Assembly (NCBI GenBank): GCA_900088475.1
Contig: FLMG01002556.1
Coordinates: 1 to 46,174, forward strand
Reading direction: 5' to 3'
Length of the DNA stretch: 46,174 nt
Source of the DNA: Hyphochytrium catenoides
Taxonomy: Eukaryota > Protista > Hyphochytriomycota
Part shown: positions 13,225 to 46,174 of the stretch, piece after piece
Position numbering within the stretch: position 1 is the first letter of the stretch
Layout of the letters: the number at the start of each line of letters is the position of its first letter
The notes under the pieces: generated by a model
Told to the model about the DNA's origin: nothing
Databases searched by the model: none
Seen by the model: only the letters and a program-made list of their open reading frames with translations
Position numbers and translations under genes: made by a program

Positions 13225-26443
<13,219 letters not shown>

Positions 26444-33690: not shown

Positions 33691-33715
33691 NNNNNNNNNN
33701 NNNNNNNNNNNNNNN
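33691..33715. other. Assembly gap that truncates ARL13; probably longer than the 25 N shown
   Basis: Run of N characters; no GxxxxGKT exon was found on the minus strand beyond it. Confidence 0.9.
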
Positions 33716-38757: not shown

Positions 38758-41700
38758 TTACACAGTTCCATCTCTCGCTTGACTCTCTTCGTCGCTATGG
38801 CTATTTACACCAGGTGCCTCTTCTGCCTCGACACATCCCTCATGGAAATGAAGGGAAGGTGGAGAGCTCAGCTTCCTTTCTATGACGTCTGTCGATAAGG
38901 TTACGCTCTTCAAAGAAGGCGGAGAACTCATGTTTCTCCTCTGTTTTGCCTGCAAAGCGGCGCCAAGGGCAAGGTGGAGATCTCGCAACACTATGCCGGG
39001 AGAGGCAACCACAGGTTCTCTTGCTCCAACTTCACCTGCCACAGAACCATTTGCCTCGCTCGAGGGGGACGCCGCAGACAAGGAAAGAGGACTGCTGTTG
39101 TGGTCATCACTTGCAAATGACTCACTGCTGGAGGTTCTTCCTCTAGCTGAAAGAGGTCTTCTTCTCACTCTCCGCTTACGAGGTGGGGACGATATATTGG
39201 ACCTCGTACTGCGTGGCATGAAAACAATACACCTTAGTGACTATGCGACGATCGAACGTCTGACGAGAAGCCTATTGTGCGCTTACCCATAGTCAGCCGA
39301 GCCACGAAGTCCGTGCTCTGTAGATGTATCCTCTAAAACCGTCTCCAACATCTCCTTCCGCTTCTCCTCAACTCGCTTGATTCTGATCTTTGCTATGATN
39401 NNNNNNNNNNNNNNNNNNNNNNNNNNNNNNNNNNNNNNNNNNNNNNGTAGAGATTATGTCCACAACACAGCACAAGAAGGTGTGACAACGTGCCACACAC
39501 CTTGAGCGAGACAAAGTCCTTGACCGCATTTTCCTTCTCTCTGGCTCCTGCAGCAGTCTTCAATTGCTTCTGCACCAACTTTTGCCGATCCTCCTCCCTT
39601 CGCTTCTTCTTTTCTTCCGCAATCCGTTTTCTTTCGTTCTCCCTGCAGCAGCAAAGTTTAGCCCGTATACTGTACACTGTATCGAAAGAGACATTTTGAT
39701 GGCAAGGGAGGTGTCGCGGACCATGTCAATTGTATATACTAAAACGTATTCCACAGAGAGAAAAAGACTTAAGTCTTATGAGAGGAGAGCAAATCAGCTT
39801 AGATAATAGAGCAGCGACTAGAACCTGTCACAGGCATGGATCATTTGGTTAAAGGAGGAGAGTGCCGTGAAGAATTGGTCAGGACTGTTGTTGGGGTTAT
39901 CAGGGTTCTCTCCAAAGCGCGCTGAAGTCTCCCTAAAGTCCTTGTTGACGGACTCCATCTCTGTCTCCAGCTCCTCGACAACTCCCATCGCACGGTCAGA
40001 GATGGGACCTAAACATTGACAAGATATCGGGTAGATGGAACAATATAAGAAAAAAGTCACCCAGAGGAAACCCTGTGAAGCGGCCAGTGTGTTCAAAATA
40101 GGGTCCATACCTAAGACTTCGACAAACTTGTCATTCTCTTCTTTCTGGGACAACTTCCGTGCTTCCTCAACTTCGCGACACATAAGACCGGCGCCCTTGC
40201 GAATGTGATCCAACCCAGCCTAGGGAGGGAAAAGGTTTAAGGTCTTTCAAGCACTCGACACGTAAATGAAAACGGGCATTAGTGCATGGGCGAAGAGAAC
40301 GTGTAAAACCAAATAGAAAACAAGGGGCGCGGCCTGTTATGGTTATGTGCCACTAAAGAGTCACAGTAAGGAGACTACAGTATGCATGGTGGCTTCATCT
40401 TACTCTCATCGTTTGGTTGGTAATGTTGGCGGCCTGCTCCATGCTAGGTAGGTCTTCATGGAACCGGAGAAGATCTGGATCCTTTTCCCTTATTTGCTGA
40501 GAAATGAAGTGAAGCAGGGTCATGCTGTTGTCCGATGCTTTCACCTGGTGGCATTATACCATTAGACGCCAAAATTGAAGGCAAGGGAGTTGAAAGAGAT
40601 TCTCGGTGAATGCAAAGGCTCATGAGATAGAAGGCTGCAGAATCGAGAAGAGAAGCACCAACGCGAAGAGGACACCATGGCTGGCCTCTTTTTGCAGTCA
40701 TTGGGCAGACTGACACCACGAGCGGCCCTGAAAGCTGAACCTACTGCCATTTAGGTCTGCACCCTACCTGAGTCAGCTTGATAAGGATGCTAATGCGAAA
40801 GCCTTTGGCGCTTCCCCTAGCAGTCCCCTCGTTCATGGCGTTTCCCAAGGTGAGGACGATGAGAAGAATCTTCTTAAGTCGGTCGGAGGTATTCAGCTCG
40901 CGGCAGGCTGAGTTTATTAGCGCCATTAGTCGCTTTTGCTCCTGAAGGCCACAAACGTGAGGAAGAGGACAACCGGAAGAGAGTGTGTAAGGAGAAAGTA
41001 TTAAGCTTGCCTATGGATTCACTACAGACTACTGACCTCTACACTGCTATCGAACGTCTGGGCTGCCAACATGGCCTGCAATCTGAAAGAGTAGCGCGGA
41101 ACACTGATGACCTGTAGAAAGAATTTCTCCACATCCCCCAGCTTCCCGCTATCTCCACCTCCCGACTCATAGTCTTTAATTGCTGAGATCTCTCCATCGG
41201 TCGGAGCGTAGCCGACTAGCGCTTGCAGCTTCTCCGGTCCCAGCACAGAAGTATCTACTCTAAGAACAGCCTAAGGGCATTAAGTTGAGGCTATTAGCGG
41301 GCCGTGGCTAGAAGTAAGTAGAGCTGAAGAGGGGTGATGCCCAGCAGCCACACAAAGCTAGGCCTGAAGCAAAAGACACCAGAGAATGGCCTTTCTGCCA
41401 TAAGGAGCTGCCCGTGGCGTGGGTAAGCCGCCTTGTGATAACCTCTTACTGGTCTGGAAGAGCAGGTGGAAAGAGCAGGGAAGCAGCTGGATACGGAGGC
41501 GAGAGATAAATCTCTCACCTTCCTGATCTCGTCGTAAGGAAGTCTAAATCGTGCCAGGATAATCCCTATATTGTATGCTCTCTTCATCTCGACAAGTTGG
41601 ACAACTTTGGGCTGTCAGAAATGCTTTAGCAACATCCACAGTTTGACAAGAAACCGTATAAGCACCTCCTCCTTCTTCTTCTTGGCTGGAGCAGGGGCTT

Positions 41701-44700
41701 GAACCGCCTTCGCAGGCTGCATTGCAAACTTCTTCTCCAGCTGGCTGAGATCCAATTCTATTGCGTCTGACCCTGGAATAAAGAGAGTGAGACTAAGCGA
41801 CAAAACAGTTGAATTATAAAGAGCTACGGGGTAAGGGGCATTCCCAGTGATTCTTGCCCTACCATACACCAAAGTTGGTGAGTCACAAATAGCGGATGCC
41901 AGGGTAGTTAAGTGAAAGAAAGCACTGGCGGTGGACATGGGGGAGATTGTGATGTTTCTACCTATCTCATTCCAAATGGTGCTTTCTATCTTGCTCTCCT
42001 CCACTTTCTCCCAGTAAAGTGCTCGCATTTTCGGTTTGGGCTTGACTAGAGGCTTGGCGGCCTCAGTAACAACAACCCCTAGAAAGATGGGAGAAAGTAC
42101 GATGTTGGCACAGCAACGAGCAACTCTAGTTGGGACAACTTACAACGTTTGTTAGATTACAAGTGACAGGGTTCGAGGGGATGTAGGTTAGGCGACACAA
42201 GAAATAACTACCATTTTGTTTAGGCAAGAAGGAGTCAGGCGTATGGATTAGCTCAGGGTTGAGTCCTTCCGCCTGCATTTTGACCTTAACGTGCACTTCA
42301 GGAATCCCCATTTTTAGGAGCTTAAAGTACTTTTGATAAGAAGGATCATCTTTCACTTTGATTCTTCCCTCTTCTTCCTTCTCCTCTGCCTTGGAGCCTG
42401 CTTTGGACGACAGGTCAGATACCGGAACCAGACATAGCTGGAGATGCGCGAAGCGGTTCAACGCAGTCAGTGGAACTGAGATTCTAAACCAAGCGACAGA
42501 AATACGCAAAAGGCCGTCTTGGTATGCCAAACAGGGTCGTCATTCCAAAGTAGTAGTCTCGGAGAAGTTACTTAGAGATATCTTGGCATCAGGAGTGTCT
42601 AACAGCTCCGGCTTCAGTCCTTCCGCTTGCATCTTGAGTTTTAAGTGATCCGGAGGCATCCCAAGCTTCAATAACTTAAAGTACTTGGTGTAGGAGGGAT
42701 GGTCACAGGCAGGTACTCCTTCCTCCTTGACTTCCTCTTCCTTGTCCTCGTCGTCTAGTAAGTAAGGGGACATCATGAGACCAGGAGTTATACTGCGAAG
42801 GTCTTACCAATCTAAGTAAGAAAAGTTAAATATAGGACATAAGGCGACTTAGGTGCACCAAAGAGGTACAGCACAGCACAATCGTCTTCAGCGGCATGGC
42901 TAGCTACCCTCGACCCTCGTTTCCAGTACCTGGTGGAAGAGGAGCGTCCGGCGTCTCGAGTAGCTCAGGCTTTAGGCCCTCTGACTGCATCTTTAGCTGC
43001 AGCTGCTCAACGGGCATTCCCAGCTCTTTCAGTTTCAAGTACTTCGCATAGCGAGGGTCGGACCGGACGGAAGGGCCCGCAGTGGAGGACGGAGGGGAGC
43101 CTGAGAGTTTAAGTTATAGCAACGTCAAGCTAACTACAGAGCAAAAGTAGACCGAACGACCTCTGTAAGCTTTAGAAAAAGAAGGGCGACAGTTGGATGA
43201 ATGCTCTGAACCCTATCAAGATAACGGACTTGTGAAGAGAACTAAAAAGAAGGTCCTACCTCGTCCCTCTCCTTTCATGATGGCTTCAGGTGCGTCCAAG
43301 AGTTCCGGATCCAAACCTTCGGCTTGCATCTTAAGCTTCAGATGCTGCGCTGGCATTCCCATAGATAACAACTTGAAGTACTTCGAATACTGAGGATGAT
43401 CTCGAACTGGAAAGTAGGGTAGTCGAGAATAAAGGCCGAGGACGTCAGGAGCTATCCTTTCACATCTGATGATGGACTCGACCACCACTAGAGTCATAGA
43501 ATAGTGCCAAAGCCTACCAGATATGCCCTTGCCCTCCTTGTCTTGTTCCGACTCTTCCTGGAATGTCAAGTCACTCTCGGTCTCTTCTAGGACTTCGGGA
43601 TCAAGACCCTCAGCTTTCATCTTGAGCTTCAAGTTTTCTTTGGGTAAACCCATCTTTAGCAACTTGAAATATTTTTGGTAGGCGGGGGAAACCACTGGGA
43701 GAAGGACCAATAACGAGAGACAAGAGGAAGAACCGTTTAAAAGAGCAAGGGTAAAGTCCAAGTTAGAGCACGTAAATTTAGATTGTTCCTTTACCCTCCT
43801 TTCTGGCTGTCGATAGCATTCCCAGAACAGGGAAGTCCAATGATAAAGGTTTAGTCCTCGGCCTCCTGGCTATTATCCTTATCTTTTTGCTCAGCTCACT
43901 TAGTAGGTTGACCTTCCCTTCTTAAAAGCTCCCTACACCCTCAGAACACCGCAGCCCTACCTTTGCCTTTCGGCTGTTCCTGGGGCGTTCGAAAAGACTC
44001 GCCTTCCAAGGTCACCATCGAATCGGGCATATCTAAGGTTGGCATCACCAGGTAAACTCATCAAAATAAACTCCCATCACAAGAGAAGTGATGATAGGCA
44101 AAAAGCATGAACGAGGTGTTCAGAAGAGGAATGAGACAAGTCTCCAGAGGGCAAGTACCAAGCAGATTAGGCTCCAATCCTTCCGCTTGCATTTTTAGCT
44201 TCAGTGGTTCTAATGGCATTCCCATCTTCTTGAGCTTAAAGTACTTCTCATAAGAAGGATGTTCTCTTACTGGGACTGCGAGCAGGAGGAAGAGGATAGA
44301 CCGCACAACCAAAAGCTATTAGGTAACAGATGAACTCAAAAGCTCAATCTCAAGAGACGTAAAGATGAAAGGAGGAAGACAAGCCAAAGCTTAGCCTCTC
44401 CTATACCCTTCTTCTAAAATCTAAGGCCCAATATAGCAAGCGAATGTCATAGCTCCATCGAATCCCTATTCTGGTGTGCCCTTTCTTACCCTGACGCGCA
44501 GCTTCGAAAGTAATTCCTTCTTTCACCATCCTATCCAGGTCAGACTCCTTGCTCTTATTCACTTTCAAAGCTGCCTGTCGAAATAGCAGGTGTGGGTCAC
44601 TGTCTGGATGGTCCTTGCAGAAAGCAAGGAATTTGTCCCTGATCCTCAAAAGCAACTTTCGGTCTACAGAAGGTAAGAAAGGCAGGTGAGACTGTGATGA

Positions 44701-46174
44701 CAAGAATGACGAGGCAAGCCAACAGCTGACAAGTGGGAGTCAAAGTGGGTCGAGTGCTGAAAGGGGAGAGTGGAAGAACCTTCCAATATACCTTCAAACG
44801 TGAGCCTATAGTTCTCAGTTTCCTCTATTGGTGTGATGACAGAGATTTCTCTTATTGTGCGCTCAGCTAGTGACCAAAGGGCTTTTCCCAAAGGAATATC
44901 TGGGGCAAGAAACAGAAGATGTTGTAGGATTGACGTAAAGCAGTCCGACACGTCTTGGTCCTTCTTCACATTGAACTAGGTGAACGTAAGCGGTAGTGAG
45001 TTGTGATTAGCTCGACATGACGTCGTCAAAGAGTCGCACCTGCAGCTCCTTAAATATGCTCTGTGGATCCGAGAGGTCCGTTTTATCGTATAGTGTGTCC
45101 TCTCTGTCTTCAGACATAAACGAATTGAAGATCTCCAGTTGCTTTTCCATGGTCTCATACTGCAGGAGAATATCCGGGTACTCTGCCCCAAAACCTGCAA
45201 TCTAATGGACGTCTTAGTGATCTGGTGTGCTGCGTCTTGGCCCTTGGACATCCTCCAACCTTTTGTTTCACCTCCTGGTAGAACTCTCCAATACCCAGAA
45301 GAAGAAAATCGTTTCGTATTGAGACTCTTTCTTCCAGCTCGCCAGCAGCATTGACCAATATGTTGATGAAGGTCATGATGTCAGTCCGGAACTCCATGGG
45401 ATATCTAAAGGTTTAAGAAGATACCAGTTAAAAGAAGTTCCAGAGGAGTCGGGAAAAGAAGGCAAGAGGGCGGGTTCTGGTTGAGGGAGAATGGGCCAAA
45501 TGACACGGAGGCACAGATCGTCAATGAGGATGTTGCTAAGGGTGAGGGTACAACTAAGAACCCGCGTGGAAAGTGTTCAAGGGTGCAACAATGCGTTAGA
45601 CTTAGGCTACCTGGAGGACCGCAGCGCCTCCATTAGAGACGCAAAGCGCACAGCTTCCCCCTTGACCTCCTTGTAGTGGGTGAAGCTAACGCAATGTAGT
45701 TAGGAGACTCACTCTGTTCACCGAAGGTTTCAGAATGAAGAAGGCGGACCAGTATGAAATGTGACTCTTTTTGAACACTATAAAGACTAAGGGTTTAATC
45801 AAGATCGTCGGATTCGACCAGCTTCGGCACATTAATCAAAAGAAGAAAAGGTATCATAGGTGTCGAGTCTGCCGTCTAAGGATGACCATTTACCTCTCGA
45901 CGACGACGTCATGACCAGCTTGGTTATTATAGCAAACAATCCCAAGCAGTCGTAGTGTCAAGGTACGGAGGTCCATCTCATTTGAATGGAAGCACAGCGT
46001 CACTCGCTGCACGAAGCCTGTCACAGAGCATATCTGTCAATATGGCGACCGTCTCACCGCTCTGCTGTTAGAACCTGCCCCAATTTTGTTTGCAGTACCT
46101 GGAAGATCGGTAATGGCATCGATGCCATCAGGAAACTGACATATGACCATAAGGATGTGCAAGACTTTTAAGGC
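38758..46174 (-). CDS. Formin (GBD/FH3 - six CCDC53-like repeats - FH2 - tail), 5' partial
   Basis: GBD/FH3: LRLLGIVCYNNQAGHDVVVE, EFRTDIMTFINILVN...ERVSIRNDFLLLGI. FH2: MRALYWEKV, KRAYNIGIILARF, VEKFFLQVISVPRYSFRL, LKKILLIVLTLGNAMNEGTARGSAKGFRISILIKL, VKASDNSMTLLHFI, RFGENP...PDQFFTALSSF. The last exon ends at 38758. Confidence 0.93.
39400..39446. other. Assembly gap in the 3' part of the formin gene
   Basis: Run of N characters. Confidence 1.
42212..44277 (-). repeat. Six exon-encoded protein repeats, consensus [DH]PxYxKYFKLLKMGMPxxxLKLKMQAEGLxPELLxxP (CCDC53/WASHC3 C-terminal-like)
   Basis: Copies at approximately 44160-44277, 43520-43695, 43260-43408, 42930-43101, 42570-42756 and 42212-42400. 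Confidence 0.92.

What the first reader, a model, noticed from the sequence alone, without database searches (positions are those of the whole stretch)
42212..44277. Formin with no polyproline FH1: six CCDC53/WASHC3-like repeats sit in its place
Seen: between FH3 and FH2 there is no proline tract (only PLPP and SPPSS). Instead there are six ~40-aa repeats such as DPRYAKYLKLKELGMPVEQLQLKMQSEGLKPELL and DPSYQKYFKLLKMGIPEVHVKVKMQAEGLNPELI, separated by acidic linkers. Established: FH1 polyproline recruits profilin-actin, and the repeat resembles the C-terminal helical motif of WASH subunit CCDC53 (DPRYxKYxKMxxxGVPxxAxxxKMxxEGLDPxLL). Inference: the array may replace FH1 as a multivalent, profilin-independent actin-feeding or partner-binding module. 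Similar repeats may exist in other stramenopile formins, but I know of no functional characterisation.
Basis: partly seen in the sequence, partly recalled or inferred. Interest (0 to 1): 0.8.

Follow-up and report, generated by a model that had tools for sequence, protein, structure and literature searches.

The report
Formin with WASHC3-type repeats replacing FH1
This protist gene encodes an actin-filament-building formin in which the usual proline-rich feeder region is replaced by six copies of a small three-helix domain otherwise known from the tail of a WASH-complex subunit. The same layout is widespread but unstudied in water moulds and related microbes.

Summary
On the minus strand, between FH3 (44,490-46,174) and FH2 (39,824-42,078), lie six 36-aa repeats. 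Each matches the last ~40 positions of Pfam CCDC53/WASHC3 (E 3e-11 to 6e-15). No minus-strand frame between FH3 and FH2 encodes a proline tract.

A GT-AG model joins FH3, one exon per repeat, one linker exon and FH2. All introns are phase 1.

The layout is not unique. A profile of the repeats finds 1,623 proteins, and 98 of the best 150 are formins. Named ones come from oomycetes, labyrinthulomycetes and a pelagophyte; Atlas clusters add diatoms and Foraminifera. The array ends a median 39 aa before FH2, and 89 of 97 have no proline run above three.

The repeat folds as a three-helix mini-domain superposable on predicted vertebrate WASHC3 (TM 0.92). The same repeats precede a CHUP1-C-like domain in oomycete MYND proteins and accompany WH2 motifs.

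I found no paper describing this architecture. That the array feeds actin in place of FH1 is plausible, but it is inferred from position only. The scan's first readers noted the same motif in other genes of this genome (s1-371112, s1-371117, s1-343185), not in this formin.

The parts
44490..46174 (-). FH3 (armadillo/DID-type) region of the formin, in several exons. The 5' part of the gene, where a GBD is expected, lies beyond the window end. The last exon before the array is about 44663-44490.
   Evidence: Pfam Drf_FH3 on exon pieces. tblastn of P0002 residues 355-735 onto 46165-44793. Donor CAGG|GTAAGA at 44490/44489.
44159..44275 (-). Repeat 1 exon (core 44160-44267). The acceptor is at 44276 or, alternatively, 44270; both are in frame. 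Phase 1 at both ends.
   Evidence: Pfam CCDC53 E 2.9e-11; splice model.
43961..44032 (-). Linker exon (D MPDSMVTLEGESFRTPQEQPKGK). It supplies the 'LL-D-x-PD' tail of repeat 1. Phase 1-1.
   Evidence: Only in-frame GT-AG solution, and it restores the conserved post-repeat motif.
43518..43694 (-). Repeat 2 exon with acidic linker.
   Evidence: Pfam CCDC53 E 3e-11; splice model.
43260..43406 (-). Repeat 3 exon.
   Evidence: Pfam CCDC53 E 2.6e-14; splice model.
42930..43100 (-). Repeat 4 exon. It carries SPPSS and ETPDAPLPP, the most proline-rich bits of the whole linker region.
   Evidence: Pfam CCDC53 E 7.2e-12; splice model.
42572..42754 (-). Repeat 5 exon with acidic N-terminal linker.
   Evidence: Pfam CCDC53 E 5.6e-12; splice model.
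42212..42397 (-). Repeat 6 exon. The acceptor is uncertain, because several in-frame AGs lie just upstream of the repeat. The donor is at 42212/42211.
   Evidence: Pfam CCDC53 E 6.3e-15. AF2 model of 42213-42362, pLDDT 89, three helices.
39824..42078 (-). FH2 domain in at least five exons. It starts 23 codons after the repeat-6 exon ends (GVVVTEAAKPLVKPKPKMRALYWEK...) and contains the LGNAMNEG motif.
   Evidence: Pfam FH2 on exon pieces covering profile positions 2-35, 103-280 and 315-370. tblastn of P0002 residues 1306-1730. Sequence read.
39498..39704 (-). Basic C-terminal tail after FH2. The gene end is uncertain because a run of N (39400-39446) follows.
   Evidence: tblastn of P0002 residues 1709-1770; N runs.

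Best explanation
Shown: this is a real, intron-rich gene for a Diaphanous-type formin (FH3 ... FH2; the N-terminus lies outside the window). Its FH1 slot holds no polyproline. It holds six copies of the ~45-aa three-helix mini-domain that forms the C-terminal tail of WASH-complex subunit 3 (WASHC3/CCDC53). The copies are strung on flexible, mostly acidic linkers and end 23 residues before FH2. The gene belongs to an old, conserved and undescribed formin class found in oomycetes, labyrinthulomycetes and a pelagophyte, and probably in diatoms and Foraminifera (automatic Atlas taxon labels). Members carry 2-11 such domains directly before FH2 and almost never a proline tract. Inferred: the array does the job of FH1. 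That is, it acts as a multivalent flexible tether that captures an actin-assembly substrate and hands it to the FH2-bound barbed end. The substrate would be G-actin itself, profilin-actin or another monomer carrier. The three near-invariant surface lysines (K11, K14, K28 of the model) would contact an acidic partner. The ligand is unknown.
For: Identity of the parts: Pfam; clean GT-AG, all phase-1 splice model; collinear with the 1851-aa relative P0002, which one search shows to be GBD-FH3-8xCCDC53-FH2. No FH1. Family-wide layout: one search gives 1623 hits, 519 at E<=1e-10. One search finds FH2 in 98 of the best 150. One search covers 97 formins, with a median of 5 repeats, a median gap to FH2 of 39 aa, only 5 with a window of 6 or more P in 10, and a longest P run of 3 or less in 89. 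Taxa. The Mucochytrium quahogii member comes from a transcriptome. Selection: synonymous sites between the six copies are saturated and non-synonymous sites are not. Fold: pLDDT 89, three helices; TM 0.92 and rmsd 1.0 A to the predicted chordate WASHC3 tail. Link to actin assembly: the same repeats, interleaved with short PGPPP tracts, lie directly upstream of a domain whose model matches the Arabidopsis CHUP1 C-terminal FH2-like domain (Z 13.5, 220 of 226 residues, next row 9.6). CHUP1 needs its polyproline FH1-like region at that same position to polymerise profilin-actin (bioRxiv 10.1101/2020.01.14.905984). Repeats also occur with WH2 (P0138; giant-virus clusters).
Against: There is no binding or activity data for this domain in any protein. 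I found no paper that assigns a function to the WASHC3 tail. The fold is a generic three-helix bundle with no informative solved relative. The argument from position is correlative. The repeats also occur with FYVE and PH domains, which fits a docking role as well. No RNA of this organism was available, so exon use is predicted. Whether this genome has profilin or WASH subunits could not be checked. In the MYND/CHUP1-C-like proteins the repeats coexist with proline tracts, so they may cooperate with a profilin-binding element rather than replace it.
Confidence: 0.5

Rival explanations
1. The array is a docking or localisation platform for a non-actin partner, such as an endosomal or membrane factor shared with the WASH machinery, acidic lipids or microtubules. 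FH2 then works as an FH1-less nucleator, capper or bundler, like Dictyostelium ForC.
For: The domain's only named home is an endosomal complex subunit. Repeat arrays also occur behind FYVE (P0049, P0055) and PH (P0099) domains. Conserved lysines would suit acidic lipids or tubulin tails as well as actin. FH1-less formins are known (ForC, cited in PMC2386819).
Against: A targeting module has no need to keep a fixed position 16-50 aa before FH2 in nearly all 97 representatives, or to be multicopy. The same slot is used before a CHUP1-C-like domain. An Atlas cluster of CCDC53/FH2 proteins has diatoms as its commonest labelled phylum. Diatoms are reported to lack Arp2/3 and WASP-family proteins (PMC3298513), so the partner is unlikely to be WASH-specific.
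Confidence: 0.3
2. The array has no specific ligand. It is a flexible spacer, an entropic spring or a self-associating element that sets the distance or stoichiometry between the regulatory head and FH2.
For: Copy number varies from 2 to 11. Repeats within one protein resemble each other more than repeats of other species (64-82% against 43-49%), as in spacer-like arrays.
Against: Strong purifying selection acts on each copy, with invariant surface residues. The fold and sequence are kept from stramenopiles to vertebrate WASHC3, far more than a spacer needs.
Confidence: 0.1
3. Gene-model artefact: two neighbouring genes (a repeat protein and a formin) have been read as one, or an FH1 exon has been missed.
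For: No RNA evidence for this organism. The exons are short, and one acceptor (repeat 6) is ambiguous.
Against: Every junction from FH3 through the array into FH2 has a canonical GT-AG pair in one consistent phase, with no stop. No frame encodes a proline tract. The same continuous layout is found in 97 database representatives, including a transcript-derived protein.
Confidence: 0.03

Closest known systems
Diaphanous-related formins (GBD-FH3-FH1-FH2-DAD)
   Same: FH3 upstream and a complete-looking FH2 downstream, with the GNxMN motif. The closest relatives (P0001, P0002) also carry Drf_GBD.
   Different: There is no polyproline FH1. Its place is taken by six folded three-helix domains. A DAD was not identified, and the tail is interrupted by a run of N.
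WASHC3 / CCDC53, subunit of the WASH regulatory complex
   Same: Each repeat matches the last ~40 positions of PF10152 above the gathering score. Its model superposes on predicted chordate WASHC3 at TM 0.92 and rmsd 1.0 A. The 'LL-[DE]-x-PDAP' tail is shared too.
   Different: Nothing matches profile positions 1-100, the N-terminal part of the Pfam model. From my own knowledge, that part is the coiled coil that builds WASHC3 into the complex. There are six copies instead of one, inside a formin. This is domain sharing, not orthology.
Dictyostelium ForC and other FH1-less formins
   Same: A formin with FH3 and FH2 but no proline-rich FH1 (ForC is cited as FH1-less in PMC2386819).
   Different: From my own knowledge, untested here, ForC has no repeat array in the gap. 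In this gene a conserved multicopy domain fills it.
CHUP1 (plant chloroplast actin polymerisation factor)
   Same: CHUP1 has a flexible FH1-like region directly before an FH2-like polymerase domain. Oomycete MYND proteins with a CHUP1-C-like fold carry the same CCDC53-type repeats in that region.
   Different: The window gene has a true FH2, not the CHUP1-C fold. CHUP1 itself uses polyproline, not these repeats.
Tandem WH2 nucleators (Spire, Cobl) and the Ena/VASP G-actin-binding site
   Same: This is only a working analogy: several short actin-monomer-binding units on a flexible chain next to a filament-end-binding element.
   Different: No sequence or fold similarity to WH2. Actin binding by the repeat is unproven.

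Membership tests
Formin (FH2 protein) | FH2 domain | tested here: met
   Five exon pieces hit PF02181 across profile positions 2-370. They are collinear with the FH2 of P0002. The LGNAMNEG motif is read.
Formin (canonical) | Proline-rich FH1 directly upstream of FH2 | tested here: not met
   No window of 5 or more P in 10 aa in any minus-strand frame between FH3 and FH2. The longest in-frame proline runs are PP.
Diaphanous-related formin | FH3/DID region | tested here: met
   PF06367 matches on two exon pieces, 33.5 and 17.2 bits. tblastn to the FH3 region of P0002.
Diaphanous-related formin | N-terminal GTPase-binding domain | not testable with these tools
   The gene runs off the window at 46174. 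Relatives P0001 and P0002 have Drf_GBD.
Diaphanous-related formin | C-terminal DAD | tested here: inconclusive
   A basic tail resembles P0002 1709-1770. A run of N at 39400-39446 interrupts the end, and no DAD motif was identified.
WASHC3 / CCDC53 | N-terminal region (PF10152 positions ~1-100) that assembles with WASH1 and FAM21 | tested here: not met
   All six matches cover profile positions 105-147 only.
WASHC3 / CCDC53 | C-terminal conserved three-helix motif | tested here: met
   E 3e-11 to 6e-15 per repeat. Predicted fold TM 0.92 to the chordate WASHC3 cluster.
CCDC53-repeat formins of stramenopiles and other SAR groups (database family, unnamed) | Two or more CCDC53-C domains ending within about 50 aa of FH2, with no polyproline | tested here: met
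   Six repeats, with 23 residues from the end of the repeat-6 exon to the FH2 exon. This matches 97 representatives and Atlas clusters auto-named 'CCDC53/FH2'.

The most novel reading that the evidence does not exclude
The C-terminal mini-domain of WASHC3 is an ancient, so far unrecognised recruiter of actin monomer or profilin-actin. In SAR protists it has been multiplied to replace polyproline FH1 in formins. It also fills the FH1-like slot of CHUP1-type polymerases. This would give formins a second, possibly profilin-independent way to feed monomers, and it would assign a function to the uncharacterised tail of the WASH complex in animals.
Probability: 0.3. Interest if true: 0.85.

Novelty: new variant of a known kind. 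Interest (0 to 1): 0.6.

Why it matters
FH1-profilin delivery is the textbook way formins speed up filament growth. This gene belongs to a whole class of formins, conserved across stramenopiles, that dispenses with FH1 and puts a different folded multicopy domain at the same spot. That class includes major crop and fish pathogens such as Phytophthora, Albugo, Aphanomyces and Saprolegnia.

If the domain binds actin or an actin carrier, it defines a new monomer-delivery module. It would also explain why WASHC3 keeps this tail from protists to humans.

There is a practical point too. Several oomycete proteins named 'WASH complex subunit CCDC53/3' in public databases are in fact MYND proteins with a CHUP1-C-like domain. 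Those names should not be taken as evidence for WASHC3. The hypothesis can be tested directly with a 45-residue peptide.

Tried and rejected
- RNA evidence: the look-up of sequencing runs listed no run, so read laying was not used and exon use rests on splice logic and relatives.
- Solved structures by sequence: nothing matches the repeat profile, best E 0.08 and noise.
- Fold of the repeat against the PDB: Foldseek found nothing at E<=0.001. VIA-align gave a best Z of 3.4, to generic helix-turn-helix or three-helix pieces. My first guesses of a UBA-like or villin-headpiece-like domain found no support and are dropped.
- Literature: no paper holds CCDC53+formin+FH2. WASHC3+FH2 gave one unrelated hit. 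PF10152/IPR019309 appear in one paper, only as a row in a Pfam enrichment table for Peronospora. The two formin surveys that include Phytophthora do not mention the repeats. A 2026 preprint on CCDC53 assembly says nothing about its tail.
- CHUP1 likeness of the MYND proteins' C-terminal domain: not detectable by sequence, only by fold.
- Profilin and WASH subunits in this genome: the scan's notes hold nothing on profilin, and only motif notes on WASH. A literature search on oomycete profilin was uninformative.
It was replaced by a DNA alignment of the six cores.
Full report
**What is in the sequence**

The window is eukaryotic, about 49% G+C, with many short introns. Earlier notes of the scan call the organism a soil protist and a stramenopile. 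The finding lies on the minus strand.

A three-frame translation shows six copies of a 36-residue core, consensus RDHPSYxKYFKLLKMGMPxEHLKLKMQAEGLxPELL. The cores lie at 44160-44267, 43588-43695, 43297-43404, 42958-43065, 42600-42707 and 42246-42353. Fourteen columns are invariant.

Each copy on its own passes the gathering score of Pfam PF10152 (CCDC53, now WASHC3), with E from 3e-11 to 6e-15. The match is always to profile positions about 105-147 of 147, the C-terminal motif. Upstream exon pieces match Drf_FH3. Downstream pieces match FH2 over profile positions 2-35, 103-280 and 315-370.

**Gene model**

Reading the minus strand, I joined the pieces through canonical GT-AG introns and checked the result by script.

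- The last FH3-side exon ends at 44490.
- Then follow the repeat-1 exon (44275-44159) and a 72-base linker exon (44032-43961).
- Then follow the exons of repeats 2 to 6: 43694-43518, 43406-43260, 43100-42930, 42754-42572 and 42397-42212.
- The first FH2 exon starts at 42078.

Every intron is phase 1 and every array exon is a multiple of three. The linker exon restores the 'LL-D-x-PD' tail that follows the other repeats. Two acceptors have in-frame alternatives (repeat 1 at 44276 or 44270; repeat 6 has several), and none of them changes the picture.

Because all array exons are symmetric, any of them could be skipped without breaking the frame. That is a possibility only, since no RNA run was listed for this stretch. 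The gene runs off the window at 46174, so its N-terminus is not seen. A run of N at 39400-39446 obscures its 3' end.

**No FH1**

No 10-residue window with five or more prolines exists in any minus-strand frame from 42,140 to 46,174. The only such window near the gene is out of frame inside the FH2 region. The only PPP between FH3 and FH2 is out of frame within repeat 2. So the absence of polyproline does not depend on my splice model.

**The copies are real and selected**

The six cores are 50-78% identical as protein. At DNA level the invariant columns are first and second codon positions. The proportion of synonymous differences is about 0.88, which is saturated, against 0.23 for non-synonymous ones. 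These are old duplicates, each under purifying selection. They are neither a recent expansion nor an assembly artefact.

**Relatives**

A profile of the six cores was scored against 1.84 billion representative proteins. It found 1,623 proteins at E<=0.001, 519 at E<=1e-10 and 108 at E<=1e-30. All of the best 150 have 2-11 matched stretches.

Pfam on the top seven shows CCDC53 x7-8 directly before FH2. P0001 and P0002 also have Drf_GBD and Drf_FH3, the same layout as the window gene. A local FH2 model finds FH2 in 98 of the 150. Most of the rest are short fragments that end in the array.

In 97 formins with the array upstream of FH2:

- the median number of repeats is 5;
- the median distance from the last repeat to FH2 is 39 residues;
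- only five have a window of six or more prolines in ten;
- the longest proline run is three or fewer in 89.

A few have a short proline patch just before the array.

Named members come from these groups:

- Oomycetes: Aphanomyces, Phytophthora infestans XP_002999233, P. lilii, P. cinnamomi, Albugo, Saprolegnia, Thraustotheca and Globisporangium.
- Labyrinthulomycetes: Hondaea fermentalgiana, and Mucochytrium quahogii, the latter from a transcriptome.
- A pelagophyte: Chrysophaeum taylorii.

ESM Atlas clusters automatically named 'CCDC53 / FH2' have Bacillariophyta, Oomycota and Foraminifera as their commonest phyla. The window gene is closest to P0002, an unnamed 1851-residue protein from a public read assembly, at 35-60% identity over collinear pieces.

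Repeats within one protein are more alike (64-82%) than repeats of different species (43-49%). So the arrays grew or were homogenised within lineages while the multicopy state was kept.

**Fold of the repeat**

With an alignment of 49 repeats, AlphaFold2 gives a confident model of repeat 6: pLDDT 89, with helices at residues 7-17, 22-31 and 36-40. Near-invariant positions are K11, K14, P21, K28, M29 and G33.

No solved chain matches by sequence. Fold searches of the PDB give only generic three-helix or helix-turn-helix pieces, best Z 3.4.

Against Atlas models the best match is the chordate 'WASH complex subunit 3' cluster, with TM 0.92 and rmsd 1.0 A over all 50 residues. It is followed by giant-virus clusters that carry PF10152, some with WH2. 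Both sides of these comparisons are predictions.

**Other homes of the domain, and why they matter for function**

Among the non-formin hits are FYVE plus nine repeats (P0049), FYVE plus three (P0055), PH plus repeats (P0099), and a 1786-residue protein with six repeats and a WH2 motif just above the Pfam cut-off (P0138).

A further family has a MYND finger and three repeats. Each repeat is followed by SPNDPGPP, and some members have longer proline tracts. The protein ends in a conserved ~320-residue helical domain. This family is present throughout oomycetes, with 38 hits including P. infestans PITG_04846. Several members are named 'WASH complex subunit CCDC53/3' by their sources, which is a misnomer.

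Two first-reader notes of this scan (s1-371112, s1-371117) had suggested a CHUP1-like domain for such a gene in this genome, so I tested the idea on the oomycete proteins.

- Sequence searches found nothing.
- An AlphaFold2 model from a four-sequence alignment (pLDDT 77) has the Arabidopsis CHUP1 C-terminal fragment as its top three Foldseek matches (probability 1.0, target TM 0.57-0.65).
- VIA-align gives Z 13.5 and rmsd 3.5 A over 220 of 226 residues, four units above the next row.

CHUP1's C-terminal domain is FH2-like. It polymerises profilin-actin only when its upstream polyproline 'FH1-like' region is present (bioRxiv 10.1101/2020.01.14.905984).

So the CCDC53-type repeats sit in the FH1 slot of two different barbed-end polymerase folds. 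They also accompany WH2 motifs, and they end a subunit of an Arp2/3-activating complex.

**How it most likely works**

Three things are shown. The protein is a formin. It lacks polyproline. A conserved, selected, multicopy folded domain occupies the FH1 position on flexible linkers.

The function is inferred. I propose that the array works like FH1, as a multivalent tether that captures an actin-assembly substrate and delivers it to the FH2-bound barbed end. The conserved lysines may contact an acidic surface. I put this at roughly 45-50%.

- The main rival, about 30%, is a docking or targeting platform for a non-actin partner.
- A ligand-free spacer is unlikely, given the conservation from stramenopiles to vertebrates.
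- A gene-model artefact is very unlikely.

Profilin independence is not supported or refuted. In the MYND family the repeats coexist with proline tracts. Stramenopiles also have FH1-bearing formins (PTEN-FH1-FH2, PMC2386819).

An Atlas cluster of CCDC53/FH2 proteins has diatoms as its commonest labelled phylum. Diatoms are reported to lack Arp2/3 and WASP-family proteins (PMC3298513). Together these suggest that the domain does not need the WASH complex. That rests on automatic taxon labels.

**Comparison with what is known, and novelty**

The gene is a formin and, by its FH3 and its relatives' GBD, a Diaphanous-type one. It fails the FH1 criterion. It is not a WASHC3, because only the C-terminal motif is shared.

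FH1-less formins are known (ForC). I found no description of formins with this array:

- no paper holds CCDC53, formin and FH2 together;
- PF10152 appears in one paper, only as a table row;
- two formin surveys that included Phytophthora do not mention it.

The architecture is visible in automatic database annotation. The window gene is therefore a new member of a family that exists in databases but is uncharacterised. Measured against the literature, that family is a new variant of the formin design.

The paper library does not cover most subscription journals, so an existing description cannot be excluded.

**Limits**

- There is no RNA for this organism.
- There are no complex predictions or binding data.
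- Fold comparisons for the repeat are model against model.
- The CHUP1-like model rests on a shallow alignment.
- Taxon ranges from the Atlas are automatic.
- Only the best 150 of 1,623 hits could be inspected.

Noticed in passing
Related proteins P0084 (Pythium insidiosum), P0112 (Saprolegnia diclina SDRG_08984), P0173 (Phytophthora infestans PITG_04846); not in this window: An oomycete-wide family has a MYND finger, three CCDC53-type repeats interleaved with PGPPP tracts, and a C-terminal domain whose model matches the FH2-like C-terminal domain of plant CHUP1 (Z 13.5, 220 of 226 residues). CHUP1 is described as plant-specific. Several members are mis-named 'WASH complex subunit CCDC53/3'. 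First-reader notes s1-371112 and s1-371117 report such a gene in this genome.
   Followed up: partly
Related proteins P0049, P0055 (FYVE), P0099 (PH), P0138 (WH2): The same repeats occur in arrays behind FYVE or PH domains, and in a 1786-aa protein with a WH2 motif (23.8 bits against a cut-off of 23.1). The domain is therefore a mobile module with membrane-targeting and actin-monomer-binding partners.
   Followed up: partly
ESM Atlas clusters found with the repeat model: Giant-virus (Nucleocytoviricota) protein clusters carry PF10152-type domains, and 12% of one cluster also carry WH2. This suggests viral capture of the module.
   Followed up: no
window 42212-44275, minus strand: All eight introns from FH3 through the array into FH2 are phase 1, and each repeat is one exon whose length is a multiple of three. 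Exon duplication could therefore have built the array, and exon skipping could vary the repeat number without breaking the frame.
   Followed up: partly
window 39400-39446 (also 15240-15291 and 33691-33715): There are runs of N in the assembly. The first lies in or just after the formin's C-terminal tail, so the stop codon and any DAD motif cannot be placed.
   Followed up: no
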